NCBI GenBank assembly: GCA_977020255.1
Contig: CDROCS010004142.1
Location: 1 to 64,000, forward strand
DNA from: Obrimoposthia wandeli
Taxonomy: Eukaryota
Length of the DNA: 64,000 bases
Direction: 5' to 3'
Below are positions 1 through 16,506 of the stretch, piece by piece. A program made the position numbers and the translations under genes. The notes beneath the pieces were generated by a model, which made no database searches, was not told the origin of the DNA, and worked only from the letters and a program-made list of their open reading frames with translations. Every line of letters starts with the position of its first letter. Position 1 is the first letter of the stretch.

Positions 1-110
1 GATAAGACATAAGACATAAGACATAAGACATAAGACGCAAGACATAAGACGCGCGGGAGCATAAGACATAAGACATAAGACATAAGACATAAGACATAAG
101 ACATAAGACC
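1..110 (+). repeat. Heptamer tandem repeat (AAGACAT)n, interrupted
   Basis: About 12 copies of AAGACAT with two short interruptions, directly upstream of repeat element copy 1. Confidence 0.95.
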
Positions 111-117
111 GCCGGGA

Positions 118-388
118 AAAGGTCAAAGGCTTTCACCTGCGGCGACAGACTTTCTTTTGACGACCAAAATGAAAGTAAGCAAAGCAAAAGGTCGCCCACT
201 ATTGCCGAAAGACTCCTCCGCTTTGAGCGATATTATTGGCCGCTCATCAGCGCCATCCATGGCGCATTCGCTCTACGCAACATCCTGTTGCTACGCTTCA
301 ATAATCTAACTCAAAGCTACGGCGGCAATACAAGGTGTTATATCGCTTCGTAGGGAGAATTTGGTGAAGCCAGTGTTATTGTGCTGTT
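118..388 (+). repeat. Dispersed non-coding repeat element, short form (copy 1)
   Basis: Blocks aaaggtcaaaggctttcacctgcggcgacagactttcttttgacgaccaaa, aaaaggtcgcccactat, tcctccgctttga.cgatattattggccgctcatcagcgccatc and ggcggcaatacaaggtgttat recur in the same order at 1567-2281. Confidence 0.9.
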
Positions 389-550
389 TTTTTTGTGGTA
401 TGCAAGAGAATAAGACTAAAAACAATCATTTTTATAGTGATAAAAAGTGGTTGTCCTTTTTGATGCTTTTATTTTGAAGCCACAGAAACATTGACAATGG
501 TATGTTCCAAATGGCCACCTATCTATAAATACCTACCTTTGGAGGTCATC

Positions 551-1420: not shown

Positions 1421-1478
1421 ACGATAGAAAGCAGTAATGATTCGTATATAAATCAATTTACACTGAACCTGTTGATTC
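1421..1478 (+). repeat. Degenerate copy of the RAYT 3' end plus REP-like motif
   Basis: acgatagaaagcagtaatgat is also found at 3818-3838; it is followed by aaatcaatttacactgaacctgttgatt, a variant of the motif at 3850. Confidence 0.8.
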
Positions 1479-1560
1479 GAACATAGAACATAGAACATAG
1501 AACATAGAGCATAGAGCATAGAGCATAGAGCATAGAGCATAGAGCATAGAGCATAGAACA
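1479..1560 (+). repeat. Heptamer tandem repeat (GAACATA)4(GAGCATA)7
   Basis: Counted directly; abuts repeat element copy 2. Confidence 0.97.
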
Positions 1561-1566
1561 AAGGTC

Positions 1567-2281
1567 AAAGGTCAAAGGCTTTCACCTGCGGCGACAGACT
1601 TTCTTTTGACGACCAAAGCTTCCGCGTTGCTTACAGGGATGTAAGTACTTAGAAACTGTCTGGAACAAGTTTCAGCTAAGCTCACGCCCCTTACCGACAT
1701 CCATGTAGGCAAAATGAAAGTATGCAAAGCCGCTCTTTGTTATTGCTTACAAGGATGTAAGTACTTAGAAATTGTCGGGAACAAATTTCTGCCATGGCAC
1801 CGCTAATACCGTACATCCTTTACATACACACTCATTGGCATTCTTGCCATCGTGCTATACCGTACATCCTGTACATAAAAAGGTCGCCCACTATAGCCTT
1901 CGCAGTTCATTCACATCCATGTGACCACTGCATTTGTAAATCCGTTTACATCAGTTCCTCCGCTTTGAACGATATTATTGGCCGCTCATCAGCGCCATCT
2001 CGATAAGTGCTCCATGCTTTATTCTACCTCCTGCATCCATGCAGGCGCATTCGCTCTTCGCTACATTGCCTACATGGATGTAAGTGTAGGTATAAGATAC
2101 TTAGATTTTTCCGGGAGCATACGCTCTTTGCCATCCATGGCACCGCTAATACCGCACATCCTGTACATAAAATCTGCCTGTTGCTCCGCTTCAATAATCT
2201 CAGCCAAAGCTCTGGCGGCAATACAAGGTGTTATGTCGCTTCGTAGCGAGAGCTTGGTGGCGTTAGTGTTATTACGCTGTT
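1567..2281 (+). repeat. Dispersed repeat element, expanded form (copy 2) with internal CATCC/GGATG inserts
   Basis: Same blocks as 118-388 separated by five inserted segments of about 40-150 bp containing ggatgtaagtacttaga, catccatg or gtacatcctgtacat. Confidence 0.88.
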
Positions 2282-2549
2282 GTCCTTTTTAGTGTTTTGA
2301 TGATTATATCGGCCGGTTTTTTAGCAGCTCATGAATCGTGGCTGTAGGGGAGGTCAAACTATGTCGCAAATTTATACACTAGACGTAAATAACCAACTAG
2401 GATTAAATATTTAGTAGTTAGTAAACTGTTTTAAATCATACGGCTAAGAAGCGTTTATGTTGTTGGTTTTACTTTTTAGGCTGATAAAAAGAGAGCGCTT
2501 ATTTGTCTATGTTGCTTAATGTGGCCTGTTACAAAGTAAAGGGATATTC

Positions 2550-3373
2550 GTGTTTGAGATAGGCAAAGAATATAAACGAAGTTCAGATATCCATGATCAG
2601 TTTGGTGGTCAGAGGCAAAGTGGAATATCGACTCCAAAAAGATCACCTGTAATATTTATATTTACTTCTGATGCGGGTGAACAGCACGGCTACAAAGATG
2701 AATATAGGGATAATGGTGTTTTTTGGTACACCGGTGCGGGGCAGATTGGCGATATGACAATGTCAGCTGGCAATAAAGCCATACTCAATCATTCTGATAA
2801 CAATAAAGTTGTTTATGTTTTTGAGTACACCAGAAAAGCTTATGTTCGCTATGTAGGTTTGGCCGAATGTTTGGGGTATCACGAAGAAACTCGACCAGAT
2901 AGGAACGGTGATCAAAGAAAGGCATTTGTATTCCATCTCTATATCAATTCTATGCTAAAAGTAATCAGATCTGAGCCGACACCAACATATGGGGTGTCAG
3001 ATACTAAGAGTTTAAAGAAGAAGAGTCTTACAGAATTACGTGAAGCCACTTTGAATTTCGCCTCAGTAAACTCCAGTGCTAAAGTAAAACAAGCAATTGT
3101 ATATTATCGGTCCCAGGCATTAAAACAGTACGTAACTGTTCGCGCCAAAGGTGTCTGCGAAGCTTGCGGAAATCATGCTCCCTTTCAAACGAAAAGTAGG
3201 ACCATACCTTGAGTGTACCACTTACACGAGCTTGCTGACGGCGGACCTGACCATCCCTCAAAATATATGGTTGCATTTGTGCTTAAAATTGTCACCGACA
3301 TGCACATTATGCGATCGACGCTACTGGATTTAACAATCGCCTGAAAGAGTTGGTTACAAATCTAGAGCTGTAA
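2550..3373 (+). pseudogene. SRA-like/HNH restriction endonuclease (modification-dependent type), frameshifted
   Basis: N-terminal GGQRQSGIS...IFIFT...GY.D....G.FWYTGAGQIGDM (SRA/PUA-like); C-terminal C..C...APF...PYLEC..H..LADGG.D HNH pieces spread over several frames after about 3190. Confidence 0.75.
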
Positions 3374-3398
3374 TACGCATAGATACATGTGATTTGAT

Positions 3399-3422
3399 AT
3401 CAATGAGTCAGAGTAAATTGAT
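3399..3422 (-). repeat. REP-like motif copy (reverse orientation)
   Basis: Reverse complement reads atcaatttactctgactcattgat. Confidence 0.85.
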
Positions 3423-3557
3423 ATGACCTTGTTGATCTCTCTCTATATAAACAATGCAGCAATAGTAAAGAATAAATGGGGTCAAATGAAGTGATATTGC
3501 ATTCTGGTGTTTTTTTGATCAATATGACATATCCTTGGTCAAGTTTTCAACATAATG

Positions 3558-3835
3558 GCCTTGGTAAGAAGATTGCACTAATCACAAACCACCCTGTGTA
3601 TAAAGCATTAGCGTCAAAAAGAAAAGAACGGCTACAAGCTTATATTTAATTGTTCGATCAGCAGTTAGCGGTACATACTATCCGAGAAATTAGAGATATG
3701 ACTAACAAGTCTTGGGTGTTAGGCGATGCAGGTTTTAAGCAGCAAATAGAAGAACAAACTACGAGGCGTTGCAGTCCATATCAGCGTGGCGGCGATCATA
3801 AATCGAATAAATATAAAGACGATAGAAAGCAGTAA
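3558..3835 (+). pseudogene. C-terminal remnant of a REP-associated tyrosine transposase (RAYT, IS200/Y1 superfamily)
   Basis: ALGK...LIT.HP.Y.AL...ER..AY then IR..TNKSWVLG...FKQQIE..T.RR..P..RGGD.KS, the typical C-terminus of gammaproteobacterial RAYT-like proteins; N-terminal HUH domain not found. Confidence 0.7.
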
Positions 3836-3849
3836 TGATCAGTATAGAT

Positions 3850-3874
3850 ATCAATTTACTCTGACCCTATTGAT
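3850..3874 (+). repeat. REP-like motif ATCAATTTACTCTGACCCTATTGAT
   Basis: Imperfect palindrome (ATCAAT/ATTGAT arms) just after the RAYT remnant stop codon. Confidence 0.9.
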
Positions 3875-3887
3875 TCCAAGAAAAGTG

Positions 3888-3993
3888 AGTGAGCCGACAC
3901 TTTTTTTACTTGAAAGCCCCGTAATATATAGGTTTAGCTACGGCTCACTTTTGTTTACAGTAAATAAAAGTGAGCCGTGCAAAAGTGAGCCGT
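3888..3993. promoter_or_regulatory. Cluster of AAAAGTGAGCCGT direct and inverted repeats (putative recombinase or protein binding sites)
   Basis: Copies at 3888-3896 (partial), 3940-3952 (inverted), 3966-3978 and 3981-3993. Confidence 0.6.
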
Positions 3994-4286
3994 TATTTTT
4001 ATACTTACTATAATAGACTGTTGGCACATAAGGCAGTTAACGGCCAAAAGCGGCAATATTGTAAGTGTTAATAATTTTTAAAAATCTAACATAAACGCGC
4101 ATTAATTTTATCATTATCATACATTGATTATAAAAATAGTGTTAATTAGGCATGAGACTAATATCGTGCGCGTTTACACTTGTAAAATTATAGAAACTAC
4201 CTCAATATCAATAATATAAGTATGAACAAAAATAAATAACGAGAAACTCGTTATTTTTACAAACGCGCATGCGTTCTGGAGAGTTA

Positions 4287-4715
4287 ATGGAAGATTCATA
4301 TAATTGGGAAATGATCTTGGGTATTTCAAGTTTTGTTATTGCTTTATGTGCCCTTTTCTTTTCTTTTTGGCAAGGACTGTTAATCAGAAAGCATAATAAG
4401 ATTTCATTTAGGCCGCTTCTAACCACTTGGCTCCACGAAGGAAAGAGTAATGGAAACTTTCAACTAGACTTAATAAATAATGGTCTTGGTCCTGCCATGA
4501 TAGAAAGTTATGAGGTTTTCCTAGATAATCAAATAATATCCGGAAAAGGTCTCGAACCGATGGATAAGCTAGTTAAAATATTGTTTGAAGGTTACAGGTA
4601 TCAACCTAATGTTGCCTATTTATCGTCCGGATATTCAATGTCTTCAAAAGAAAAGTGTGCTCTCATTTCTATTCAATTTAATGAAAGGCATGGCCTTCAG
4701 AGAACAATGGAGTGA
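4287..4715 (+). CDS. Hypothetical protein with N-terminal membrane anchor, cassette-like; C-terminus possibly truncated
   Basis: ILGISSFVIALCALFFSFWQG transmembrane segment followed by basic residues; ATG directly after GTTA. Confidence 0.65.
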   Translation: MEDSYNWEMILGISSFVIALCALFFSFWQGLLIRKHNKISFRPLLTTWLHEGKSNGNFQLDLINNGLGPAMIESYEVFLDNQIISGKGLEPMDKLVKILFEGYRYQPNVAYLSSGYSMSSKEKCALISIQFNERHGLQRTME

Positions 4716-4851
4716 TTAACGCGTAGACGCCGAATAAAGATATAAAGTCATTTTTACGAGAAATTCTCTATGGATTCTGCGATTAATTGTGTACAAGAAA
4801 ATTCAGTTAGCACAGAAGCTTGTAGCGTTAGGCAGCTGGAGTAGTCAGAAA

Positions 4852-5686
4852 ATGAAATCTCAAATACTTAGAAAGTTTGAGTCAAAGCTTGAAGATATGA
4901 ACGACCAACTATGTTATTTTTTGTTTTCAGATGTTGAAGTTAAAAATATATTTTCTGCACTAGAACAAGATGTTTCAGGCTCGTTTACAACAGAAGCATT
5001 CTCTGAAAACAAGTTTTCAGAGCGTCTTCATATCAAAATTGAAGCGTTGCCTAAATTCCGTGATAAAAGCATTCACTCTGAGCATGAGTGTTGTAAATCG
5101 ATCGAATTTGTGCAGCTATTTAAAGGGTATTGAAGAATTTCGAGCAAATATAATACCTTCGACCCATGACCAAATAAATGATAAAAAACCGGAAGAACAG
5201 TTAAAACTTAAATTGACTAACTGGCTGGGTAAAGAGCCTGAAGTTGAAATTATTAAAACAATTAAATACTTAAGGTTACGACGAAACCACATAGCGCATG
5301 TTCGAGAAGAGTTGAGTGATGGGTACCGTTCAATGATTAAGCATGATTCACATCATTTAAATAATTATTGGGAAAAACAAGCAGCAAAATTAAATGGATT
5401 CGACTTTACCAAAAATAGTTACGCAGAATTTGAAGTTAATGAAGTATTTGCATTAATTAATTTAGCGAGAATTTGCATGCGAGAGGTTGATTCATCAGTT
5501 TTATCAAGTATACCCGAAGAAATAATCGCTAGTTATGAACTTCCATTTTTTCTTAGAAGTAAAAAGCTTAATGGCTTAAAAATAAATGTAAAATCACGCA
5601 AGTTTAATGCTTTTTTACAAGGTAAATACGGAAGCAAAATATCATGCGCTGACACTTTAATCAGAGCTCATTTTGAAAAGACCTAA
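4852..5686 (+). pseudogene. Integron-type cassette gene with HEPN-like RNxxxH motif, one frameshift
   Basis: GTTAGGC at 4827, GGAG RBS, ATG 4852; the frames join if one A is removed near 5065-5068; LRLRRNHIAH motif; stop codon lies inside the attC inverse core CCTAAC. Confidence 0.7.
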
Positions 5687-5766
5687 CAGGTTACTCAAAT
5701 GGTCTCTAAGCGCTTGACTAAGATTCACTTTATCCAACTATATCGCGCTGCTTAGTAGCGTTAGGC
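5681..5766 (+). mobile_element. attC recombination site (86 bp)
   Basis: ACCTAAC inverse core containing the gene stop, inner gcgctgcttag arm, and core site GTTAGGC followed by RBS and start of the next ORF. Confidence 0.8.
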
Positions 5767-5780
5767 AATAAGGAGCTACA

Positions 5781-6457
5781 TTGTTTTTACCTCTATCGGC
5801 ATGGATCAAAGCAACACACCCGTTACCTAAAAGGTTCTTGCTACAAAACTATACTGACCAGTTTAACGAGAGCTGGCTATGCTGGGTCGTACTGGAAGAA
5901 GTGTCTGAATTGTATGAAGTAAATAAACTGACGTGGGTTTCTCTAAGCGCATCAAGAAAAAAACTAAAGAATATATTTCGAAAGCCGGAGCTGTAGTTGG
6001 TGAAATTGATGATGATGGATGGCTAGATAAAGAGGAGGGATTCTGGATTAAAGAGGAATTGGGGAACCCTCCTCACCCATGTTTACCGATCTATATCATT
6101 ACAGTAGGTAGTGGTGATAATGAACGCGTTGTTTATATTGGAAAAACAAAAAGCGCATCTAGGTTTACTGGAGGTCATTCGGCTGCTTTAAAACTACATG
6201 CTCCGGAATATAAAGGTCTAGAAAAATCAATTTATAGGTGTTCAGTCTGGTTGGATATTGAAGATGAATATGTTGCTATTGATTGGATAGAACCAGAAAC
6301 TCTAGCCCTAGATATTTTCGACTGTGTAGAGTCTCAATTAATTTATGACTTGCAACCAGAGCTTAACGTTGAAAAGCGGGCAAAGGTGAGTGGCAAACAT
6401 CTTCTTGATAGGATACATATTTCAAAGGCGCTCGCCATCTGCAAACTAAAATCCTAA
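5781..6457 (+). pseudogene. Cassette gene encoding a GIY-YIG-like nuclease, frameshifted
   Basis: AAGGAG RBS, TTG 5781, frameshift near 5935; PIYIIT...VVYIGKT....RF..GH and downstream ESQLI fit GIY-YIG motifs. Confidence 0.6.
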
Positions 6458-6524
6458 ATGATCACTTTATTTTTGCAGAACAAGAACTTTAATCGATAAA
6501 AAACAGTAGCTATTTCGCTCCGCC

Positions 6525-6566
6525 ACATAATCATAGTCGCCAGTTTTGCCGCTTAAATGAGCTTTA
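6525..6566 (+). mobile_element. Degenerate, internally deleted attC
   Basis: acataa...gccgcttaaatgagcttta resembles attC arms; the core GTT is mutated. Confidence 0.35.
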
Positions 6567-7071
6567 TTCTTCCCTATAAATGTCTACTTTTCACCAAAGA
6601 GAGGTTTCTATTGCATGACCATCCCCTAAAGCTCATGAATGATGAACCACGGGTGTCGTAAACTCGCGATTTCCGTGAATTTTCGGGTTTATGGCTAGCC
6701 ACCGCCACCGGTAAAGATCCAACCCTTTGTATTTACAAGTAATATAGTACTGGTTACAGTGGCTATTCATATAACCGGATAATGCAAAACAGTAGCCAGT
6801 GGCAATCATGGCCATTATCAGCTCCAGTCAGAAAATAATACCATATTGAATGGGATAAATATTTGAGTATAGAGTTCTAAACAATACTTATTAGGCTTTA
6901 TCTAGTAGGTGTAATCATAAAAAGTCTTATGGTTAGCACTCCAGACCATTCAAAGGCCCTCTAATATGAGACGCTTGGGCTCTTTGTGTAACTACTAGAC
7001 ATTTATTTTTAGTTAATTTTTGAGCGCTGGATTCTAGTTTTTTGGCAAATAGTTTTACAGTATTTCTTTAA

Positions 7072-7095
7072 ATCAATTTACTCTGACCCTATTGA
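7072..7095 (+). repeat. REP-like motif copy
   Basis: atcaatttactctgaccctattga, identical to 3850-3873. Confidence 0.92.
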
Positions 7096-7125
7096 ATTCA
7101 AAATCAATCTGCCTTCGTCTTATCT

Positions 7126-7184
7126 GCCTAATAAAAGTTATTTAGCTAAGCACCGCGCTTTAGGTGTTTTTAAATAGGTTATAC
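7126..7184 (-). mobile_element. Degenerate attC (59 bp) on the minus strand
   Basis: Minus strand GTATAAC...taaagcgcggtgcttagct...ATTAGGC just after the stop codon; a GTTAGGT core lies 6 nt upstream of this gene's ATG (7999-8005). Confidence 0.5.
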
Positions 7185-7191
7185 ATTCTCA

Positions 7192-7992
7192 CTATAGCTG
7201 CTTTATAATATCAGGGTTAGCAATCCTCTTAATCACAGCGCCCGAAGGTATCTCTAAGATAACTGACTCTTTACCATTGTAAAAAGCTACTCGTTTATCG
7301 TTTAGTGCAACTAAGACGCCCTTATGCAGTAGGTTGCCTTTAGAATCGTTTAGTTGCGAGCAGTTGCTCCACAAAGCATCTTCCTTGTATAAACATTCTC
7401 CATTTTCTCTATAACTAGCTATTGCATTATTTGCTTGAATTAAACCTTGAGACGCGCCTAGTATATAAACAGAAAACCAGATAATCATGAATATAAAAGG
7501 CACTGTAACTAGAAGGTACATTGTAGAAAAGGTCATTACCAAAAGGCCTATTAATCTTTTAATGTTTTTATGAAGCGAGGAGAAATAGCTCTGTATCCGA
7601 CTAGAAGTAGGTAGTTCACTCTTAAGCTTTGCTAAAAATTCTTTATCGTTAAGCAGTATAGAAATACAGATAGCCAAAGAAATCATAAATAATGTTACTA
7701 AAGCAGTAGCCGTAGTATTTGTGAATATAGTTTTGCTCTCATTCCAGATAGCAAGGAAGTTATAAGTAATAGCATTTGAAGCGCTTATGTAAGTGTCTTG
7801 TATGCTTAATGGGAAAGCGCTTGACTCAACACCAAATGCGCTGAGATATGCGCCATGGAAGCTGTTGCCTATTAAGTAGCTGACGAATGGGAATGATGCT
7901 AATAATATAATGATGGCAGCTTTAAAATTGATTCTACTGCCGGTTGGCTTTTCTTCTACTTCAGTTTCAATTTGTTGAACTTGCTCGCTCAT
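7192..7992 (-). CDS. Hypothetical multi-pass membrane protein (probable integron cassette gene)
   Basis: 266-aa intact ORF with 3-4 hydrophobic segments; bounded by GTTAGGT and a degenerate attC. Confidence 0.75.
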   Translation of the reverse strand: MSEQVQQIETEVEEKPTGSRINFKAAIIILLASFPFVSYLIGNSFHGAYLSAFGVESSAFPLSIQDTYISASNAITYNFLAIWNESKTIFTNTTATALVTLFMISLAICISILLNDKEFLAKLKSELPTSSRIQSYFSSLHKNIKRLIGLLVMTFSTMYLLVTVPFIFMIIWFSVYILGASQGLIQANNAIASYRENGECLYKEDALWSNCSQLNDSKGNLLHKGVLVALNDKRVAFYNGKESVILEIPSGAVIKRIANPDIIKQL

Positions 7993-8123
7993 GTCTTTAC
8001 CTAACTAATGGAAATAAAATGCTCTTTTAAATCATATTGCCAAATAAAGCAATGGATCTTGTGAGAGGCAGAAGCGTCTATATAGTCAATCTCGTATCGA
8101 AATGGAATATCGTCTGGAATCAA

Positions 8124-8163
8124 AAATCAATTTACTCTGACCCCCGAATGGCCCTATTGATTT
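8124..8163 (+). repeat. REP-like motif copy with short internal insertion
   Basis: aaatcaatttactctgacccccgaatggccctattgatt. Confidence 0.88.
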
Positions 8164-8252
8164 TCATTAATGGACAGTGATCATTAGTTTTCAAATGCCG
8201 CTGGCTACTGACTCCATTGATTCTATTAGCCACTACATTTAGTGGCTTACTC

Positions 8253-8687
8253 TTATGTTGATCTTCGATGGCTTAAGCTGGCGGCGAGGTATGCGGCTTC
8301 TTGGTATTTTTTGAGCTTAGCAGGGCGTGAAAAAGGCTGCTTTTTATCAGCAGCTGCAATGGCTTGCCCAGTGATTAACTCAACCTCAACTATAGCGTTT
8401 AATTGAATGATTGCCTCCATTTTAAAAGAGATAGCACCACCTGCCATCGTGCCTTTTTTTGCACGCTTTTTAACCACTAGTTTTTCGATATTATGGCTTT
8501 GAATAAAGGTGGTGATAGCCTTGTGAAAATCGTTTATGCAAGCGACAGACTCATCATCTTCAAGCTCGATTTTGCGCTGCGCCAGTTCAATAAACTCTGC
8601 ATTATTACCCTCACCGTTATTATGGCAATCCAATAACACGAGAACTGCATGGGATGATTTGAGTTCAATGCCGCAAATACGTTTCAT
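8253..8687 (-). CDS. DUF3010 family protein
   Basis: M.RICGIELKS...KKRAKKG.MAGGA.SFKMEA.IQL motifs. Confidence 0.8.
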   Translation of the reverse strand: MKRICGIELKSSHAVLVLLDCHNNGEGNNAEFIELAQRKIELEDDESVACINDFHKAITTFIQSHNIEKLVVKKRAKKGTMAGGAISFKMEAIIQLNAIVEVELITGQAIAAADKKQPFSRPAKLKKYQEAAYLAASLSHRRST

Positions 8688-8716
8688 ATTTTTATCCTAA
8701 GCCTGTGAGGCAGTAG

Positions 8717-8938
8717 TTAGTTTTGATCAGTGTTTTTATGGAGCACCATGGCTTGATCGAAATTCTCGGTAATATCAGCCATTGTTTTGCGGTGCACAGG
8801 GCAATCCTTTTCTGTGTTGTGTATCCCGCGCCAGTTACCGCCAACTGGCTTTAAAGCTATTAAATATCCACTGTCTTCCTTTTCGGCGGCACTCATTCTG
8901 CGCTCTGCTATTTTAGTCACACAGCTTTCATAATGCAC
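8717..8938 (-). CDS. Small hypothetical protein
   Basis: 73-aa ORF upstream of and co-oriented with DUF3010; no family recognised. Confidence 0.35.
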   Translation of the reverse strand: MHYESCVTKIAERRMSAAEKEDSGYLIALKPVGGNWRGIHNTEKDCPVHRKTMADITENFDQAMVLHKNTDQN

Positions 8939-9189
8939 TAATATTTACAATCACTTAGCGTTAGAGTCTCAGCCCTCAGGTCTCATCTCTCAACTTACTA
9001 CAAAGCAACTTTGAAAATTCGAAACTTATAGCTCAAATATTATTCATCGAATACTAGGATTCTGATAGATAGATCCAAAAAACATTTTATATTAGTAATT
9101 GTTAATATAACTTGGCTTATAGAGTAATTAGGCTACAGTAATTAAGAGTAAAATATAAATTAACTCTGATATAACACAAAGAGGCAAGT

Positions 9190-9747
9190 ATGAAACACAA
9201 ATTTATAAAAATGGCTGCCTGTGCAGCTCTATTGACAAATGCGATGATAGGTAGTGCTTTTGCGGATGATAAACGTAATTTTGTTTACTTTCAGTGTGAT
9301 ACAAAAAATGAGAATGGTGCCATTATTTATTCACGTATTAGTAATATTTACACTTATCAAGGAGATGGCTATAGAGGTGATCAGTTGATAAGTAATGGCA
9401 AAATAAAAGCTATATTTGATGGCTTGCCTTATGAGTCGGATACTGGGTTACATTTAACAACTCAAGGAAAAATTAAATGTAGTTCAAATAAAGAAAACGA
9501 TAGATCGATAGGTAGCGTACTGTCCTATTTTATCAAATCATATTCGCATGAGTTTGGTGGTTATAAAACCCCATATGATGTGTTTGAAGGATTTCATAAG
9601 AAATCTGAGTACATCGCAGGGCTAAAAGAGCTTCGAGAGTTACGGGTGGAACCTTTAATAAAATATTCGTATATCAAATTTGAAAGGATGGGCGTTACTG
9701 GTGCTGCCGGAGATAAGGTAATTAAGCTTACTAGCGTTGTTGATTAA
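9190..9747 (+). CDS. Exported hypothetical protein
   Basis: GAGG RBS; signal peptide MKHKFIKMAACAALLTNAMIGSAFA. Confidence 0.75.
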   Translation: MKHKFIKMAACAALLTNAMIGSAFADDKRNFVYFQCDTKNENGAIIYSRISNIYTYQGDGYRGDQLISNGKIKAIFDGLPYESDTGLHLTTQGKIKCSSNKENDRSIGSVLSYFIKSYSHEFGGYKTPYDVFEGFHKKSEYIAGLKELRELRVEPLIKYSYIKFERMGVTGAAGDKVIKLTSVVD

Positions 9748-9917
9748 TATAATTACATGGTTTATTTGGTTATGTTGGGTAATTAAAAAAAACAATTTTC
9801 TTAGCTAACGCTCTTGGTTTGCTAATTTACTCGTACCTAACAGTAGTTGTAGTGATTAATTGTCAAATAGCGACAGCATAAACATCTGTATAAATTACCA
9901 AAAAAATACGACATACA

Positions 9918-9959
9918 GATCAATAGGGTTAGATCAATAAGCTCAGAGCAAATTGATTT
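9918..9959 (-). repeat. REP-like motif copy (reverse, partly duplicated)
   Basis: Reverse complement aaatcaatttgctctgagcttattgatctaaccctattgatct. Confidence 0.7.
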
Positions 9960-10137
9960 ATAACCCTTTGCTTAAACCTACTTCTAACTGCTGGCAATAC
10001 CTAGCTGTTTGGCTATCTGAGCTATTATTCTTTAAAATCATGAGTCCCATTGTCAATATTTAAATGAATGGCAATGGGGGCTCGTATAATCAGCTCAGTT
10101 AATAAACCTACTTCTATTCCAATTAGCTCTCTATTAG

Positions 10138-10290
10138 CCTCTATATCAGCGCTATCCATCAGTAAGCTTGCATAACACCCGCTATTACCAATAGGTCATG
10201 ATGGCTGCCTCGCTCTAAAATATTACCTTGGTTTAGCATTAAGATTTAGTTTGAATGTTGAATAGTACTTAGGCGTTGCGCAATCGCGAT
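10138..10290 (-). pseudogene. Decayed copy of the 3' end of the ABC transporter gene at 14709-16506
   Basis: Hand alignment to 14747-14900 gives about 129/154 identities; translates IAIAQRLSTIQHSN*ILMLNQGNILERGSHHDLL with a stop and a 1-nt gap. Confidence 0.9.
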
Positions 10291-10522
10291 CTTCCCTATA
10301 TCTACCTTTCTTTCTTTCTACCTCAAGTTCTGCCTATCTCCAATTCTCTTTACCTCCAATTCTACCTATTACCTCACTATTAATTATATTCATGTAGATC
10401 TGAAAATAATGAGTTTTACTAATTAACTGACCTTGCATATGATTAGCTCACGTTGTAATTGATAAACACATTGATTGGAGCGCTAACAGAACACTCATTA
10501 ATCGAGTACTGAGGAGATTTCC

Positions 10523-11230
10523 ATGCAAACTGATCATCTAGTAAAAAATGCAAATACTAACCGCGACCTTGAAACACGTTTAGCCGCTCAAGGTGTGTTA
10601 ACGTCAACTCGCGTTACTTGCAATGATTTACAGGCTGTATCAATAATGACAATGGATGCTCAGGTCGATCAGTTAGTGGTTCAGTTTGAACAGCAGCTAA
10701 AGCAAGGTAGCGACATTATTGAAGTTAACTTAACGTCTTCAGATACTGCAGATAAAGTCTGTGAGAAGGTTGCATTTTCTTGCTTAAAGGCAGCGAGAGT
10801 TGTGGCTAATTCTGCCTCTATTGCTTCAATTAATTCACCGACTACAACACAAGCGAAGCAACAGCCGTTATTGGTAAGCCTTGAGTTAGAAGCTAGTGCA
10901 TTGAATATTCCTCAACACAAATTGCATCATCTATTGCTGACGGCTCAGGCCCAAGGTGCTGACTTTGTAACCGTGAGCGATATTGTTGATGTAGGTGTGG
11001 CTAAAAGATTGATTTTTGCCGGTGATATGGTTGATGTGCCTGTGGTATTAAGTTTGCACCAGCAAGCTTTACAAGCTCAAGGGCATTGCGCAATAGAGCT
11101 TAGTCAGCAGTTATACCAAGCAGGTGCTGCCGCTGTCGGTGTTGAGGGTTATATTGGCCCACAAAATACTGATTCAGTTGATACTCACTGCTGGTTAACA
11201 GATAAGCGTGGATCACTGTATATCCACTAA
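10523..11230 (+). CDS. Divergent homocysteine S-methyltransferase-like protein lacking the Zn ligands
   Basis: GSDIIEVN, GADFVTVSDIVD, PVVLS and GAAAVGVEGYIGP echo the HMT barrel, but GxNC and terminal GGCC are absent; GAGGAG RBS. Confidence 0.5.
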   Translation: MQTDHLVKNANTNRDLETRLAAQGVLTSTRVTCNDLQAVSIMTMDAQVDQLVVQFEQQLKQGSDIIEVNLTSSDTADKVCEKVAFSCLKAARVVANSASIASINSPTTTQAKQQPLLVSLELEASALNIPQHKLHHLLLTAQAQGADFVTVSDIVDVGVAKRLIFAGDMVDVPVVLSLHQQALQAQGHCAIELSQQLYQAGAAAVGVEGYIGPQNTDSVDTHCWLTDKRGSLYIH

Positions 11231-11297
11231 GAGACCCAGGCTTTGAGTGTGCTTTGTTGCTGATCGAGATTAATCAGCACAAGCAGCTTGATGCGCT

Positions 11298-11810
11298 CTA
11301 TTTGTAATAGCCGAATGATTTTTTAAATTCAAGCAGGTTGCTGTTATCTATTTGGCTATCTGCTATGAATGTTTGCGAGACATGGAAATCTATACATTTT
11401 CCTGCTCTGTAGCCGTAATAATTAGCGTTATGTTGTATGAGCTTTTGACCTTTATATGTACCTTTGACTGAATAGGTAACGATTGAAAATGGCTCAGAAG
11501 GGCTGATTTTAATAGTATCTTTTTGTATGTTTGGATTTTTTGCAGAAAGTGCCCAGTAGTACTTCATGCACTGCGAACTTGTAGAGCCTTTGCCTTGAGC
11601 TGGTTCAACAAAACCTGAAAGATTGAAGCCCACCTTAGTTGATGCTTTAAGTTGGTAATCAGTAGGTGAAGCGCTACCTCGTTGCTTGACAAGCTTTGGC
11701 GAGTTAAATTCAAATCCCCAAGTTTCACCTGGCACCATGAAAATACTACTGGCATGCAGTGCTGGCGAAAGCGTTGCTAATGCGAAGACTAAAAATTTTT
11801 TCATCATCAA
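11298..11810 (-). CDS. Exported hypothetical protein
   Basis: Signal peptide MKKFLVFALATLSPALHA; two Cys; intact ORF. Confidence 0.75.
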   Translation of the reverse strand: MMMKKFLVFALATLSPALHASSIFMVPGETWGFEFNSPKLVKQRGSASPTDYQLKASTKVGFNLSGFVEPAQGKGSTSSQCMKYYWALSAKNPNIQKDTIKISPSEPFSIVTYSVKGTYKGQKLIQHNANYYGYRAGKCIDFHVSQTFIADSQIDNSNLLEFKKSFGYYK

Positions 11811-12117
11811 TCCTTGATAGTTTTAAGGCAAATTTACCTGCAGGTTCCTTAGGTCAATTCAATAAAAAGTGAATAAGCCATTAACATTTGCCTGCTTAGA
11901 GCGTCAATACTGCAATATTTTTAACGGGTTTACTAGCAGGCTATTGAATCTAAGGCCAGACCCTAAGATAAAAGTCTAAGATAAAAGTCTAAGACAAGAA
12001 TTTAAAAGAAGAGCTTAAGGTGCACTCATAAAGTGATGGCCGTGTATCAATCTGTATCTAGCGCTAGTGCATAAAGGAGTGCTTACTGTATGTGTAGAGC
12101 TGTTTTACACTATGAAA

Positions 12118-12162
12118 ATGTCGTATGTTTGCATTGAATATATGTCGTATGTTTGCTATATT
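12118..12162 (+). promoter_or_regulatory. Sigma70-like promoter overlapped by 15-bp direct repeats (putative autoregulatory operator)
   Basis: ATGTCGTATGTTTGC at 12118-12132 and 12142-12156; TTGAAT(12134)-17 nt-TATATT(12157). Confidence 0.65.
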
Positions 12163-12187
12163 TAAATGTAATAGTTGAGGGGGTATC

Positions 12188-12586
12188 ATGACGATTGCAA
12201 ATAGAGTGAGGACAAGGATTAATCGTTCAAAACGCTATGTTTTCGCACGTGCCGATTTTTCGGATATTGCAGGGTATGACCAAGTCGGTCGAGAATTAAG
12301 AAAACTCGTTAAAATCGGCTTGTTGCTGCGCATTGCTTATGGTCTTTACACCAAAGCTAGAATCAATAGTATTACTGGGGAGATTATGCCTGCATCACCT
12401 AGTGGTGCTGATGGTGTGATTTTAGAAGCTATTAAAAAACTTGGTGTTGATTATAGGTTTGATGATTTCTCCCAGCAAAGTATTAATGGAAGTAGTTTAC
12501 AAATACCTGCGTCATTTGAAATTATTACCAGTAATCGATTTAAGCGTAAAATTGTAGTTAGCAATCGAGCTGTTAATGCGGGTTGA
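12188..12586 (+). CDS. AbiEi-type antitoxin / DUF6088-like transcriptional regulator
   Basis: VF.R.DF.D...YDQVGR.LR.LV..G.L.RI.YG.Y winged-helix signature; overlaps the start of the AbiEii gene. Confidence 0.8.
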   Translation: MTIANRVRTRINRSKRYVFARADFSDIAGYDQVGRELRKLVKIGLLLRIAYGLYTKARINSITGEIMPASPSGADGVILEAIKKLGVDYRFDDFSQQSINGSSLQIPASFEIITSNRFKRKIVVSNRAVNAG

Positions 12587-13472
12587 TAAAAATACTTTCA
12601 TTGAAGTTTCTGATGCCTTAGAAATGGGCAACCGCTTATTGCTTATTGTTTGTCACAGTTTACTGCTTTGTCATAAATCGTTTTTCATTGATCTTCACCG
12701 AATGTCAGAAGATGTTGATATTAAGATGATCCCACAACATGCATTTGAAGAATCAAGCTCAAGAGGTGCCCGTAAAAAAGCTAGAAAACAAAATTATCTA
12801 GCGGTTGTTAAGCGAATAAAAGAAAGTAGCTTTTTCTCTATTGAAGGTGAGCCGACTTGTCGAGATGAATATAGATACCAGGTTATTGATGTTTGTTATC
12901 CGCAGTCACATACAATAGCACCATGTTTGAGACCTTTTATAAAACTAGAGTTAATTGAAACCCTGCTTTACGATGAAATTCAATACCGACCTATAACATC
13001 ATTAACAGCAAAAGCTTATAAAGAAAATGCTGAAATAGATGCGATGGCATTTACGAGTATATTGAGTACTCAAACGGAAAAAATAATCTCAATGCTTAGA
13101 CGCACTGCTAGCTTTTATAGAGATAATAATAGAAGTGAAGATCCAGCGTTAATTCGTCATATTTATGATACGTTTCATATTCAAAACGCAGGTGAAGCAG
13201 ATGTTGCCGAGATCATACCGCTGATTAAAGAAGTCATCATTGATGATGTGAAACGATTCGGAAATCAACACACTCAATTTGTTAATGATCCAATTTCTGA
13301 ATTGAAATTTGCGTTGAAACTGCTTGAAGAAAACAGTGAATTTGAAGATAGATTCAACCAATATGTTGTGCCAATGGTGTATGGCAGGGGAGTAATTACT
13401 TGGGCTGAAGCATTCGATACTTTTAAAAAAACTGTCAACGCTGTGTTTGAAGAATTAGATAAAAGCAGATGA
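12576..13472 (+). pseudogene. AbiEii-family nucleotidyltransferase toxin, N-terminal catalytic segment disrupted
   Basis: RMSEDVDIK, PFIKLEL, EKIISMLRR and RHIYD motifs are present, but the EKDY and GGT motifs expected before RMSED are replaced by out-of-family sequence. Confidence 0.7.
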
Positions 13473-13541
13473 ACCACAGTTGCTACTACTCACATGGTAA
13501 ATGTCTCCTCATCACTCCGGCGGTAAGCTGGCACTATTGAT

Positions 13542-13597
13542 CTGCCTCGCTCTATAATCTTACCTTGGTTAGCACTAATATTTAGTCAATCAGAATG
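13542..13597 (-). pseudogene. Second, shorter decayed copy of the ABC gene 3' end
   Basis: ctgcctcgctctataatcttaccttggttagcactaatattt...cagaatg aligns to 14815-14867. Confidence 0.8.
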
Positions 13598-13826
13598 CCC
13601 TTATCTAGCGATAAGGTATGAAGTGACAGTGCATAAAGCAGCTCTTACGTATAAAAGGTCATAGAAAACTGATGTTTTGTTTTTTGCCACGAGTTCTAGG
13701 TTTATAAGCTCTACTTAAAATTTAATACTTAGAAGGTATAATAAAGGTTAAATGTTTGGCTAGATTAACTGATAAACAAGGTCAGATTAGCGGTCGTTAT
13801 GGCTTGTGTGATCAAATAATAATTAT

Positions 13827-14219
13827 TTAATCTTCTGATTTCTTAGAGGGATTGGTAGGCACGACTTTATTTTCTACCAATGAGTACGATGTAATAGCCG
13901 CACGGTTTTCAATCAAAACAGCGGCGTTGTCATGCTGACTGTAGCGTTGAGCATTGTGAATGAATAAGGCTAAATTATCTTGGTATTGCATTTTGCGTTC
14001 AGCATCATTTTGATTGTTCAGATCAATAAAGCTTTGATTATCAAGCTCAGAAGAAGATAGCTGTTGAGCCTGTTTACTAATTTTGACTGTATCTTCAATG
14101 GCTATAGGCGCCGCTGCATCTGGAGTATTGTTTAATTGGGGCTGCTGGGTTTTGTGTATTGTGCTGATTGTTACATTACTGGAGATTAACATAATGATGC
14201 TACCTATTTTATATCTCAA
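13827..14219 (-). CDS. Hypothetical protein
   Basis: 130-aa ORF with DTVKISKQAQQL-type low-complexity motif; start uncertain. Confidence 0.5.
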   Translation of the reverse strand: MRYKIGSIIMLISSNVTISTIHKTQQPQLNNTPDAAAPIAIEDTVKISKQAQQLSSSELDNQSFIDLNNQNDAERKMQYQDNLALFIHNAQRYSQHDNAAVLIENRAAITSYSLVENKVVPTNPSKKSED

Positions 14220-14331
14220 GCAGAGTGTTAATAGAGCTTAGAGTCATGTGAATTTTCGTGCTTTACATGGTAATTTATACGCAGCTAGCATTTTATAGAT
14301 TCAATTAGTTGAAAAATCTAGCTTCAATCGT

Positions 14332-14580
14332 TTGGTTTTAGATGAAGCAGAGGATTTAAAAGCGATATCTATTCGCATGCAGAACTCGCTAATTGATGAT
14401 TTAAAATTAATAGCAAAAATAAACGGGCTAGATTATCAGCCACTCATTAAGCAAGTGCTGTTGCGCTTTGTTGACGCTGAGAAAAAGCAGTGGTTAAAAG
14501 CAGCAGCCAGTGCAGTGGAAGACCAGCAAAAAGAGAGCCGAAATGAAGGGGAGTTAAGCGACAAATGCGTAGTTGCTTGA
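14332..14580 (+). CDS. CopG/RHH-type antitoxin-like protein, probably 5'-truncated, no toxin partner
   Basis: ISIRMQ.SLIDDLK.IA..NG..YQPLIKQVL.RF motif. Confidence 0.6.
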   Translation: MVLDEAEDLKAISIRMQNSLIDDLKLIAKINGLDYQPLIKQVLLRFVDAEKKQWLKAAASAVEDQQKESRNEGELSDKCVVA

Positions 14581-14598
14581 CCTTTGATTTAAGTAATT

Positions 14599-14623
14599 AG
14601 CCTCGCCTATAGCGAGGCTTTTT
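14599..14623 (+). terminator. Rho-independent terminator
   Basis: agcctcgc-ctata-gcgaggct followed by a T run. Confidence 0.8.
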
Positions 14624-14708
14624 ATAGATATGGAAGATGCATTACCTACGATTCGTGATGGGCATCAATAAGCTCAAAGCTAATCAATCCTACCCTCAAG
14701 CATCAACC

Positions 14709-16506
14709 TCAAGCATCAACCCCAGGTATCAGCAACGTCTCATCATCCTCTATATCAGCTCCATCCGTCAGTAAACGTGCATAAACACCCGCCATTGCCA
14801 GTAAATCATGATGGCTGCCTCGCTCTACAATCTTGCCTTGGTTGAGTACTAAGATTTGATCAGAATGTCGAATGGTACTTAGGCGGTGAGCAATCGCGAT
14901 AACGGTCTTTTCTTCAAACAAACGTCCAATGGCTTTCTGAATTAAATTCTCGGTAATGGAGTCTACTGAGCTGGTGGCTTCATCTAGCATCATCACTTGT
15001 CCGCCTTGCGCTACTGACCGTGCAAAGGAGATTAGCTGAGCTTGGCCTGCCGATAAGTTACTGCCATTGTTTTTTAGCTCAAAGCGGTACTGATCTGCTA
15101 GGTCTAAAATAAAGTCGTGGGCATAAACGTATTCAGCGGCGTCGATCACGGCGTTGTCTGTAATTTCTTGAGCGCCTAGAGAGATATTAAAATGGATATC
15201 CTTTTCAAACAGAAATACATCTTGTTGCATCAAGGAGAACAAGTGCAGCATTGAGTCTTTGGGAATGCTTGATAGTTCAATACCGTTGAGTTCAATGCTG
15301 CCTTGGTAGTGCATGTAGGTTTTATTCATGATGCGAATGATGGTTGATTTACCTGAACCTGTGGTGCCGACTAAAGCTAATTGTTCGCCTTTTTTTAGCA
15401 TAAAGGACACATCATCTAAAACGTAGGGGCCTGTACCGTTATATTGAAAACGCACATTTTTGAATTCAAGAGTCTCAAAATTAGCCAGCTTATCTTTTAA
15501 TGACTCTGCTGATAAAAGGGCTAGCCCTTGTTCTTCTAAATCTTCTACAAAAAGCTCTTCAATGTGTTCAAAGGCTGCAAAAGAGCGCTGTATGGAGCGT
15601 TGAGGGTGAGAAGTCGCACCTTGTGCAATTTACTTTTCTAAGGTATTGATGAAGGCGATCAATACACCAAGGCGGCTCTAAACCCCGCCAGCACGCGCCT
15701 TTGCTGACCCGCGCAAATGTGGGTCCGATGGTGATGGAGGTTATGCCCGTTATTACCGAGAATAAGCTGGCATCGTACTTATTAGTTTTTAATTGCGCGC
15801 GTAAAAAATCTTCGGTGTAACGATGATACTTAGCTTCTACTTCTGCCTCGGCACCATACAATTGCACTGTTTTTACACCTAACAAACACTCTTGTAAAAA
15901 GCCTGTGCTTTTGGCTAAAGATGAGCGGGTAATAATATACATTTTACGTAGGCGATTGCGCACATACTGGGTCAGCATCAACACCGGAGGAAACACCAGC
16001 AAGACTAACAGGGCTAATTGCCAGTTAATGAAAAACATAAATATGAGTACGGCTAACGTATTGATTGAGTCTTTCACCAAGCTCAGCACACCCAACACAA
16101 ACGAGTCACCTATGACTTCTAAATCGCCGGTTAAGCGTGACAACGTAACACCGGTGGGTGTTTTGTCATAGTAGGTTCTGGGCAGTTTTAAAACGCGCTC
16201 AAACAAGGCCATACGAATATCAAAAATAGCCTTTTGACCGGTTATACGCAAACAATAAGTGTAGATGGCATCGGCAATGTAGTTGACGATTAATACCACC
16301 AACATGATGGTAATTAGCATCATCAACCCATCGTATTTTCCCGGTGTAAGGTGCTCATCAATCACTTGAATCACTAGCCAGGGGAACATCAAATTAGCCA
16401 GCACTGATATTGGCATCATTAACAAACCAATGATGGCCGTTTTTTTGTAGCGTGATGCATAGTGAAAGAAATGTTTGAGGTATTTTACATCAAGAGATTT
16501 AATCAT
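14709..16506 (-). pseudogene. ABC exporter permease/ATPase subunit (MdlB-like), reading frame broken at about 15590-15730
   Basis: N-terminal TMD ORF 15568-16506 plus NBD ORF with GTTGSGKST, LSAGQAQ, LDEATS and AHRLST; LGVLIAFINTLEK is recoverable in another frame at the junction. Confidence 0.85.

What the first reader, a model, noticed from the sequence alone, without database searches (positions are those of the whole stretch)
1421..9959. RAYT remnant plus six copies of a REP-like motif that punctuate a cargo-gene array
ATCAATTTACTCTGACCCTATTGAT or close variants occur at about 1451, 3399 (rev), 3850, 7072, 8124 and 9918 (rev). One follows the stop codon of a RAYT C-terminal remnant, and another carries a duplicate of that remnant's last bases (1421-1441 matches 3818-3838). 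The copies fall at boundaries between unrelated cargo genes: SRA-HNH, the attC cassette block, the inverted cassette 7192-7992 (enclosed by the 7072 and 8124 copies), and DUF3010 plus an exported protein. RAYTs are known to act on REP hairpins. That these motifs delimit or recruit cargo, as a REP-bounded gene-capture array, is my inference and to my knowledge not an established system.
Basis: partly seen in the sequence, partly recalled or inferred. Interest (0 to 1): 0.72.

Follow-up and report, generated by a model that had tools for sequence, protein, structure and literature searches.

The report
Decayed RAYT transposase with clustered REP ends
The six repeats are the hairpin ends of a small REP-associated tyrosine transposase (RAYT) element, left here as one broken copy plus stray ends inside a decaying accessory island; they mark rearrangement breakpoints, but nothing shows that they capture genes.

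Summary
Six copies of the ~25-nt motif lie at window 1452, 3399(-), 3850, 7072, 8126 and 9919(-). There are none in the other 54 kb, and chance predicts 0. The RAYT link also holds. On another contig of the same metagenome-like assembly (C2735), an intact 237-aa Y1/HUH transposase is flanked by inverted copies of the motif. Window 3515-3835 is the catalytically dead 3' third of such a gene (89% nt identity), and 1421-1451 is a second 30-nt stub.

The motif is base-for-base conserved in many Gamma- and Alphaproteobacteria, next to RAYTs only 46-84% identical. Copy number is low (7-25 per genome) and the copies cluster. It has ~180-bp MITE-like derivatives and stuttered ends. So this is an IS-like RAYT/REP family, a known kind.

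The claim that the copies punctuate cargo is partly supported. Between two close relatives, indel breakpoints in an array beside ssrA fall exactly on motif termini. One window segment (7098-8060) starts within 2 nt of a motif end. In another relative, however, the same MITEs sit among ordinary metabolic genes. The window's cargo segments are not framed by left-end/right-end pairs, and one relative with an array has no cognate RAYT. Gene capture is unproven. Local transposition plus recombination at repeats is enough to explain the pattern. The attC calls could not be verified.

The parts
1421..1451 (+). Stub of a RAYT gene: its last ~30 nt, including the stop region
   Evidence: Aligns to the 3' end of the intact RAYT and to window 3818-3849 (D5)
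1452..1476 (+). REP, right-end type (AAATCAATTT...), degenerate with 3 mismatches
3399..3422 (-). REP in left-end position and orientation; left end of the internally deleted RAYT element
   Evidence: forms an 18-nt perfect inverted repeat with 3848-3865 (I8)
3515..3835 (+). RAYT pseudogene. Only aa ~135-237 remain. The HUH motif and catalytic Tyr are missing, and there is an in-frame TAA at 3647-3649
   Evidence: 89% nt identity to L001; tblastn 86% over aa 137-237
3850..3874 (+). REP, right end of the deleted element, 14 nt after the RAYT stop; exact consensus
7072..7096 (+). Solo REP, right-end type. Homology of the 7098-8060 segment to relative G191 starts within 2 nt of its terminus
8126..8161 (+). 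Solo REP, right-end type, with an 11-nt insertion in the loop and the stem preserved
9919..9957 (-). Solo REP, right-end type, inverted, with a 'stutter' copy of its 3' half (CCCTATTGAT)
   Evidence: the same stutter occurs in 41 of 112 copies elsewhere
2550..3333 (+). Context: SRA-like/HNH gene, pseudogenised. The HNH motif is split over three frames
   Evidence: Pfam SAD_SRA E=6.6e-5, below cut-off; frame translations
7192..7992 (-). Context: 266-aa membrane protein gene with no family hit. Present at 82% nt identity in relative G191, in a different neighbourhood and without REPs
8253..8687 (-). Context: DUF3010 gene. In G191 it lies on a different contig from the 266-aa gene
10133..10290 (+). 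Context: displaced copy of the 3' end of the ABC ATPase gene (native copy 14742-14900). It marks serial island insertion, and the REP cluster ends 175 bp to its left
   Evidence: D3, D9, D14; homology to four relatives stops at ~14740

Best explanation
The motif is the terminal hairpin (REP) of an IS-like RAYT element, a member of the HUH/Y1 transposase family. The autonomous form is left REP (inverted), then a 237-aa rayT gene, then right REP. The window holds only wreckage of this family:
- one internally deleted copy (3399-3874) that lacks the catalytic two-thirds of the gene
- a second right end with a 30-nt gene stub (1421-1476)
- three solo right-end REPs (7072, 8126, 9919)

All of them sit in a decaying accessory island that also carries parDE, AbiE, an SRA-HNH pseudogene and other frameshifted ORFs. 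The island was built by serial insertion at the 3' end of an ABC ATPase gene.

Inferred mechanism: the RAYT binds the folded REP in single-stranded DNA, then cuts and rejoins at its outer terminus (...ATTGAT|). This spreads the element, its ~180-bp MITE-like deletion derivatives and solo ends. Spread is mostly over short distances and with a strand bias, so copies pile up in DNA that tolerates insertion. The repeated ends then act as breakpoints for deletion, replacement and rearrangement, which is why they sit at seams between unrelated genes. Any activity here would need a transposase supplied in trans, for example the intact copy on C2735 if that contig belongs to the same cell.
For: Shown:
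- An intact ORF on C2735 is flanked by inverted motif copies, 14 nt past the stop and ~62 nt before the start.
- It carries Pfam Y1_Tnp (E=5e-13), and its best NCBIfam hit is REP-associated tyrosine transposase. Its only PDB match is E. coli TnpA-REP 4ER8, aligning the HxH and YIxxNPV motifs.
- The window fragment is 89% nt identical to that gene's 3' end.
- The exact 23-mer occurs in 97 stretches from dozens of Gamma- and Alphaproteobacteria. RAYT homologs of 46-84% identity lie beside it in about 20 of them.
- Copy number is 7-25 per genome and clustered.
- Left-end/right-end doublets 30-150 nt apart are the commonest pairing.
- ~180-bp MITEs that keep the last ~105 nt of the gene are about 90% identical between G004 and G005.
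- All MITEs within an array share one orientation: 7/7 in G004, 3/3 in G005 and 5/5 in G187.
- 41 of 112 copies carry tandem partial repeats of the terminal (GACCCY)ATTGAT.
- Other genomes also have gene-stub-plus-right-end relics (L075, L078, L093).
- Breakpoints fall at REP termini in G004 versus G005 and at window 7097.
Against: - The hairpin is weak: a 6-7 bp A/T stem with a 13-nt loop, no more stable than shuffles. It lacks the GTAG/CGTC tag of classical REPs.
- The NCBIfam RAYT score (66.7) is below the curated cut-off (80).
- No biochemical or read-level evidence of cleavage or excision exists. The only public run holding this DNA is thin and kept as contigs, and it showed no joints at REPs.
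- It is unproven that C2735 and this contig come from one cell.
- Clustering this strong (6 of 7 copies in 6.5 kb in G005) is more than simple tolerance of insertion predicts, and I did not model it.
Confidence: 0.72

Rival explanations
1. REP/MITE-bounded modules are real units of exchange. Arrays of same-orientation ends act as landing pads. Gene modules flanked by the ends are swapped in and out, either by homologous recombination between the ~180-bp repeats or by the RAYT using a left end and a distant right end as a composite transposon. This is.
For: - In the orthologous arrays beside ssrA in G004 and G005 (about 92-93% nt identity in core DNA), all three content differences are bounded by motif termini. 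These are a replaced module, a 2.3-kb module between two MITEs that are adjacent in G004, and a ~9-kb block.
- Five of about eight breakpoints fall to the base on ...ATTGATT|.
- The window segment 7098-8060 starts at a REP terminus.
- Orientation is uniform within arrays.
Against: - Homology ending at a shared repeat is expected whatever the mechanism.
- G005 has the array but no cognate RAYT.
- In G187 the MITEs separate ordinary metabolic genes.
- The window's segments are not framed by left-end...right-end pairs.
- Other boundaries do not coincide with a REP: 8054 is 70 nt short of the next REP, and the DUF3010 homology covers the gene only.
- Only one pair of genomes could be compared.
Confidence: 0.2
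2. The region is an integron cassette array (or a CALIN, a cluster of attC sites without an integrase). attC sites and an integron integrase do the gene capture, and the REPs are incidental passengers.
For: - Two sites end in GTAGCGTTAGGC, with a plausible inverse core (ACCTAAC at 5683) and bulged pairing.
- The ORFs are small, promoterless-looking and same-strand.
- A parDE pair is typical of chromosomal integrons.
- Integron integrases exist on four other contigs of the assembly.
Against: - There are only two such sites. Their folding energies and my R''/R' pairing score are no better than shuffles.
- No integrase lies in the window, and no shared attC-like sequence occurs next to the four integrases.
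- Three of four relatives lack an integron integrase.
Confidence: 0.06
3. The copies are chance matches or an assembly artefact.
For: The contig starts at window position 1, inside repeat-rich DNA.
Against: Shuffles give 0 matches. The same motif occurs with the same gene in dozens of independent genomes. A public run holds pieces of the region.
Confidence: 0.01

Closest known systems
RAYT/REP systems: E. coli TnpA-REP (YafM, PDB 4ER8) with REP/BIME, and Pseudomonas REPIN-RAYT (Nunvar 2010; Bertels & Rainey 2011, PMC3116915; Messing 2012, PMC3479197)
   Same: - HUH/Y1 transposase with HxH and YxxxNPV...WSS motifs.
- The gene is flanked by inverted copies of a short palindromic repeat that also occurs elsewhere in the genome.
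- Inverted doublets (REPIN-like) are the commonest arrangement.
   Different: - Copy number is 7-25 rather than hundreds.
- The hairpin is A/T-rich and weak, with a conserved 13-nt loop and no GTAG/CGTC tag.
- The repeat is base-identical across two proteobacterial classes instead of lineage-specific.
- Some genomes carry several RAYT copies (G192), others none (G005).
- The protein has a ~90-aa C-terminal extension whose coding 3' end belongs to the mobile right end.
Group 1 RAYTs of Bertels, Gallie & Rainey 2017 (PMC5581495)
   Same: That paper describes Group 1 as widely distributed, associated with flanking 16-mers of only ~12 occurrences per replicon, the most IS-like of the true RAYT groups, occasionally on plasmids, and possibly horizontally transferred. 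This matches the low copy number and wide distribution seen here.
IS200/IS605 family (IS608, ISDra2) and their MITE/PATE derivatives
   Same: - Y1 transposase acting on hairpins in single-stranded DNA.
- Non-autonomous internal-deletion derivatives.
- Strand (orientation) bias.
- No clear target-site duplication.
   Different: IS200/IS605 ends are dissimilar subterminal hairpins, whereas these two ends are inverted copies of one 25-mer. The protein scores as RAYT (NF047646, 66.7 bits) rather than IS200 transposase (NF033573, 19.9 bits).
Integron cassette arrays (IntI/attC) and XerCD pdif modules of Acinetobacter plasmids
   Same: Analogy only: short palindromic sites punctuating small accessory-gene modules in a variable array.
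   Different: No integrase or attC could be verified here. No site-specific recombinase is linked to the motif. Exchange of modules is inferred from a single genome pair.

Membership tests
RAYT (REP-associated tyrosine transposase) | Y1/HUH transposase fold with HUH motif and catalytic Tyr in YxxxNP(V/L) | tested here: met
   Intact copy L001:3890-4603(-): Pfam PF01797 E=5.2e-13. HVH and RYIELNPV align to 4ER8 TnpA-REP. The window copy lacks this part.
RAYT (REP-associated tyrosine transposase) | Passes the curated NCBIfam equivalog model NF047646 | tested here: not met
   66.7 bits against a cut-off of 80. It is still the best-scoring family, and IS200 transposase scores only 19.9 against 55.
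RAYT (REP-associated tyrosine transposase) | Gene flanked by inverted copies of a palindromic repeat that recurs in the genome | tested here: met
   L001 3852(-) and 4665(+). The same arrangement occurs in L006, L063, L126 and others.
Classical REP / REPIN population | Tens to hundreds of copies per genome, dispersed in extragenic space | tested here: not met
   7-25 copies per genome, strongly clustered in G004, G005 and G192.
Classical REP / REPIN population | GTAG or CGTC tetranucleotide tag at the foot of a stable G+C-rich hairpin (Di Nocera 2013, PMC3733652, title and abstract only) | tested here: not met
   The motif has no such tag. The stem is ATCAAT/ATTGAT, and folding energies of -1 to -5 kcal/mol are mostly within the shuffle range.
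Domesticated, vertically inherited single-copy RAYT (Groups 2/3) | One copy per genome and lineage-specific REP | tested here: not met
   An identical REP occurs in Alpha- and Gammaproteobacteria. There are three RAYT copies or remnants within 25 kb in G192, two in G001 and none in G005.
IS200/IS605 insertion sequence | Dissimilar left and right subterminal hairpins, and a transposase matching the IS200 model | tested here: not met
   The ends are inverted copies of one 25-mer, differing mainly at CCCC versus CCCT and in the 3 nt before the stem. NF033573 scores 19.9 bits against a cut-off of 55.
Integron cassette array | Several attC sites (R''-L''...L'-R' with GTTRRRY) in one orientation, with or without intI | tested here: inconclusive
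   Two sites share GTAGCGTTAGGC. A heuristic pairing score and folding are at shuffle level. No intI lies in the window. IntegronFinder was not available.

The most novel reading that the evidence does not exclude
Arrays of same-orientation RAYT ends (MITEs and solo REPs) in island hotspots would form a cassette-exchange platform, built on HUH-transposase ends rather than on an integrase and attC. Modules bounded by ...ATTGAT| termini would be excised and inserted next to existing ends, either by the RAYT in trans or by recombination guided by the ends. This would make the locus an integron-like gene-shuffling site.
Probability: 0.12. Interest if true: 0.8.

Novelty: new member of a known kind. 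Interest (0 to 1): 0.38.

Why it matters
For this window the result is mostly housekeeping. An apparently exotic 'REP-bounded capture array' resolves into relics of a RAYT element in a decaying island.

Three points go slightly beyond the textbook picture of RAYTs as single-copy, vertically inherited genes with lineage-specific REPs:
- The family's 23-nt end is conserved to the base across two proteobacterial classes, while its transposase has diverged to about 50% identity.
- It stays at low copy number and piles up locally in island hotspots: beside ssrA in two relatives, and beside an ABC-gene insertion site here.
- Differences between orthologous arrays break exactly at its termini.

If the last point holds up in a population sample, these ends would be a new kind of seam for modular exchange of accessory genes.

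Tried and rejected
1. Integron reading. I searched the whole assembly and four relatives for integron integrase and fetched about 90 kb around the four integrases. None share attC-like or REP sequences with the window. My R''/R' duplex heuristic gave scores at shuffle level. The reading remains unverified.

2. The long 'modular repeat' (118-395, 1565-2290) as an attC. Rejected: only one copy lies near an integrase, and it scores as a TwoAYGGAY-like RNA motif instead.

3. Counting the motif in the 'own genome'. G000 is a 1.35-Gb metagenome-like assembly, so a 14-mer count is dominated by chance. Only the 25-mer and gapped patterns were informative.

4. Orthologous locus. In four relatives, homology stops at the ABC gene's 3' end (~14740), and the DNA beyond it differs in every genome and has no REP. 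So no direct gain/loss test of the window's own segments was possible.

5. AAAAGTGAG as an insertion target. It abuts REP ends at window 3885 and in G004, where a 10-bp direct repeat flanks a 577-bp insertion. It is present beside only 7 of 112 copies, so I rejected it.

6. An empty site for the intact element. The helicase next to it has orthologs in G004 and G005, but the flank beyond is rearranged.

7. Read evidence for excision. The only run is held as thin contigs and shows no joints at REPs. This is uninformative rather than negative.

8. A literature search for the motif string returned only unrelated primer sequences.

9. Rfam at gathering thresholds found nothing in the window.
Full report
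**What is in the sequence.** The 25-nt motif ATCAATTTACTCTGACCCTATTGAT, or close variants, occurs six times in window 1452-9957 and nowhere else in the 64 kb. Shuffles give 0.00 matches. The copies are:
- 1452-1476 (+)
- 3399-3422 (-)
- 3850-3874 (+)
- 7072-7096 (+)
- 8126-8161 (+), with 11 extra nt in the loop and the stem kept
- 9919-9957 (-), with its 3' half partly repeated

As single-stranded DNA each folds into a 6-7 bp A/T stem (ATCAAT/ATTGAT) with a ~13-nt loop. This is weak and mostly within the range of shuffled controls. What is conserved is mainly sequence, together with the stem.

**The transposase link.** The window belongs to G000, a 1.35-Gb assembly of 6912 contigs. It behaves like a metagenome: Xer-type recombinases appear on more than 50 contigs, and some bacterial contigs exceed 4 Mb. 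Outside this contig the full motif occurs only on C2735 and C3917.

On C2735, two inverted copies 790 nt apart frame an intact ORF (L001 3890-4603, 237 aa from MARLP). The ORF has the Pfam Y1_Tnp domain (E=5e-13). Its best NCBIfam match is REP-associated tyrosine transposase (66.7 bits, cut-off 80). Its only PDB match is E. coli TnpA-REP 4ER8, which aligns the HxH and YIxxNPV...WSS motifs.

Window 3515-3874 is 89% identical in DNA to the last 320 nt of that gene plus its downstream motif. It encodes only residues ~135-237, so it has neither the HUH motif nor the catalytic tyrosine, and it carries an in-frame TAA. With the inverted motif at 3399, this is an internally deleted, dead copy of the element. 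Window 1421-1476 is a second right end that keeps only ~30 nt of the gene.

**The family at large.** An exact-pattern scan of one genome per species found the motif in 97 stretches. Nearly all read TCAATTTACTCTGACCC(C/T)ATTGA. They come from many Gammaproteobacteria (Nitrincolaceae-type Oceanospirillales, Litoribrevibacter, Alcanivoracaceae, Halieaceae, Kangiellaceae, Methylobacter, a Pseudomonadaceae MAG and a bivalve symbiont) and Alphaproteobacteria (Magnetovibrio, Rhodospirillaceae, Emcibacter, Kordiimonadaceae).

RAYT homologs of 46-84% identity lie beside the motif in about 20 of these stretches. The end is thus conserved to the base while the protein has diverged to about half identity. 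That fits an enzyme-recognised end carried by a horizontally moving element better than a lineage-specific REP.

Other properties of the family:
- Copy number is low, at 7-25 per genome.
- Left-end copies (TTATCAATTT...CCCC) and right-end copies (AAATCAATTT...CCCT) can be told apart.
- Left/right doublets 30-150 nt apart are the commonest pairing.
- A ~180-bp MITE-like derivative (left end, ~35 nt, then the last ~105 nt of the gene with the right end) is about 90% identical between genomes G004 and G005.
- In 41 of 112 copies the terminus is followed by partial tandem repeats of (GACCCY)ATTGAT, as at window 9919. I read this as a footprint of repeated cutting and joining at that end, which is an inference.
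- Gene stub plus right end relics like those in the window also occur in L075, L078 and L093.

Bertels et al. 2017 (PMC5581495) describe Group 1 RAYTs as widely distributed, the most IS-like of the true RAYT groups, and linked to flanking 16-mers of only ~12 copies. This element fits that description, but I could not test group membership.

**Where the window copies sit.** An ABC-transporter protein in the window (16503-18371) is 85-89% identical to four Nitrincolaceae-type genomes, G001, G002, G004 and G005. In all four, DNA homology stops at window ~14740, the 3' end of the ABC ATPase gene. The DNA beyond differs in every genome and carries no REP.

Displaced copies of that gene's 3' end at 10133-10290 and 13542-13570 show serial insertions. 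So window 1-14.7 kb is an accessory island, cut off by the contig end. It holds:
- parDE
- AbiEi/AbiEii
- an SRA-like/HNH gene with its HNH motif spread over three frames
- two further frameshifted ORFs
- DUF3010
- several proteins that match no family

Core genes in the rest of the window are intact, so the decay is probably real rather than an assembly artefact.

Distribution:
- In the complete genome G005, 6 of 7 copies lie in 6.5 kb.
- In G004, at least 7 of about 11 copies lie in 12 kb.
- These two clusters are orthologous and start just downstream of the tmRNA gene ssrA, a classic island hotspot.
- They contain IS66 and IS3 fragments, a group II intron, DUF2726, a DUF4123-type module and an EVE-domain protein.

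Breakpoints: G004 and G005 are about 92-93% identical in core DNA, but the arrays differ by three events.
- A replaced module lies between a solo left end and the next MITE.
- A 2.3-kb two-gene module lies between two MITEs that are adjacent in G004.
- A ~9-kb block is present only in G004.

Five of about eight breakpoints fall to the base on ...ATTGATT|.

In the window, the segment carrying the 266-aa membrane protein (7098-8060) recurs at 82% in G191, in a different neighbourhood and without REPs. The homology begins within 2 nt of the terminus of the 7072 copy. It ends about 70 nt short of the 8126 copy.

So the motif is not evenly spread and breakpoints do coincide with it. The idea is not refuted, and the 'punctuation' is real.

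**Why I do not accept gene capture.**
- Homology that ends at a shared repeat is expected from any process that keeps the repeat and changes what lies between. That includes recombination between repeats, or with incoming DNA that carries them.
- The transposase gene is framed by left end...right end. The window's cargo segments are framed by right/left (1452 to 3399), right/right (3850 to 7072, and 7072 to 8126) and right/inverted-right (8126 to 9919).
- G005 maintains its array with no cognate RAYT. Its best hit is 35% identical over 70 residues.
- In G187, where the family has 25 copies on at least 10 contigs, five same-orientation MITEs are spaced 3-7 kb apart. The genes between them are an aminotransferase/GntR regulator, DHDPS, a LysR regulator, a sulfatase, an S41 peptidase, an AraC regulator and binding proteins. 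That is ordinary intergenic behaviour.
- Uniform orientation within arrays (7/7, 3/3 and 5/5) is what strand-biased single-strand transposition of Y1 elements is known to give. This rests on established knowledge of IS608/ISDra2 and was not tested here.
- The other ssrA islands in the genus have ordinary 25-27 nt tmRNA-end repeats and no REP.
- The only public run holding this DNA is thin and kept as contigs, and it showed no alternative joints.

**The attC block.** Two sites (about 4713-4833 and 5683-5770) end in GTAGCGTTAGGC and can be drawn as bulged hairpins. However, their folding energies and a simple R''/R' pairing score are at shuffle level. No integron integrase is in the window. The four integrases elsewhere in the assembly have no related sequence beside them. 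Only one of four relatives has such an integrase. I leave this as unverified.

**Verdict.** This is a known kind of thing: a RAYT/REP element of the IS-like, low-copy sort, present here as dead relics. The 'capture' mechanism is unsupported. The residual novelty lies in the cross-class conservation of the end, the local pile-ups in island hotspots, and the exact coincidence of array differences with the termini. A small chance remains that these arrays are true exchange platforms.

Noticed in passing
window 118-395 and 1565-2290 (also L010 2547-4138; L047 4078-4525; L052 1230-1705): The long 'modular repeat' that brackets parDE scores as Rfam TwoAYGGAY RNA on the minus strand (207-333, 37.5 bits, gathering 43, E=0.004). 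Homologs at 71-77% nt occur as four tandem copies ~420 bp apart in G002, each with its own short tandem repeat. Others bracket the REP/MITE arrays beside ssrA in G004 and G005. In G005 a group II intron is inserted in one copy.
   Followed up: partly
window 4056-4273: A conserved non-coding element (84-94% nt over ~110 nt in G002, G005 and G186-G189, where core DNA is only ~80% identical). It has repeated AAACGCGCA/TGCGCGTTT boxes and a hairpin AATAACGAG-AAA-CTCGTTATT, just upstream of ORF 4269-4715. It also shows 5-10 times higher depth than its surroundings in the public run, so it is repeated in the community.
   Followed up: partly
window 3880-3990: Four copies of AAAGTGAGCCG (one inverted), directly after the right end of the dead RAYT element. 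They look iteron- or operator-like. AAAAGTGAGT also forms a 10-bp direct repeat around a 577-bp insertion ending in a MITE in G004 (L047 ~4508-5095).
   Followed up: partly
window 10133-14900: Three staggered copies of the ABC ATPase gene's 3' end (10133-10290, 13542-13570 and the native 14742-14900) delimit two small integrase-less islets. One of them carries AbiEi/AbiEii (12188-13472).
   Followed up: partly
window 1-110 and 1480-1560: Heptamer tandem repeats (GACATAA and CATAGAR). They directly precede the conserved 51-nt head of each modular repeat (118-168 = 1567-1617, 100% identical).
   Followed up: no
L047 3507-4048 and L077 7727-8000 (G004 and G005): The tmRNA gene is followed within 60 nt by an Rfam RtT-like element (49-50 bits, above gathering), then the modular repeat, then the REP/MITE array.
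   Followed up: no
G000 as a whole: The 'genome' of this window is a mixed assembly: 1.35 Gb, with tyrosine recombinase hits on more than 50 contigs and four separate integron integrases (C253, C5466, C2866, C666). Whole-genome counts from it are not counts for one organism.
   Followed up: partly
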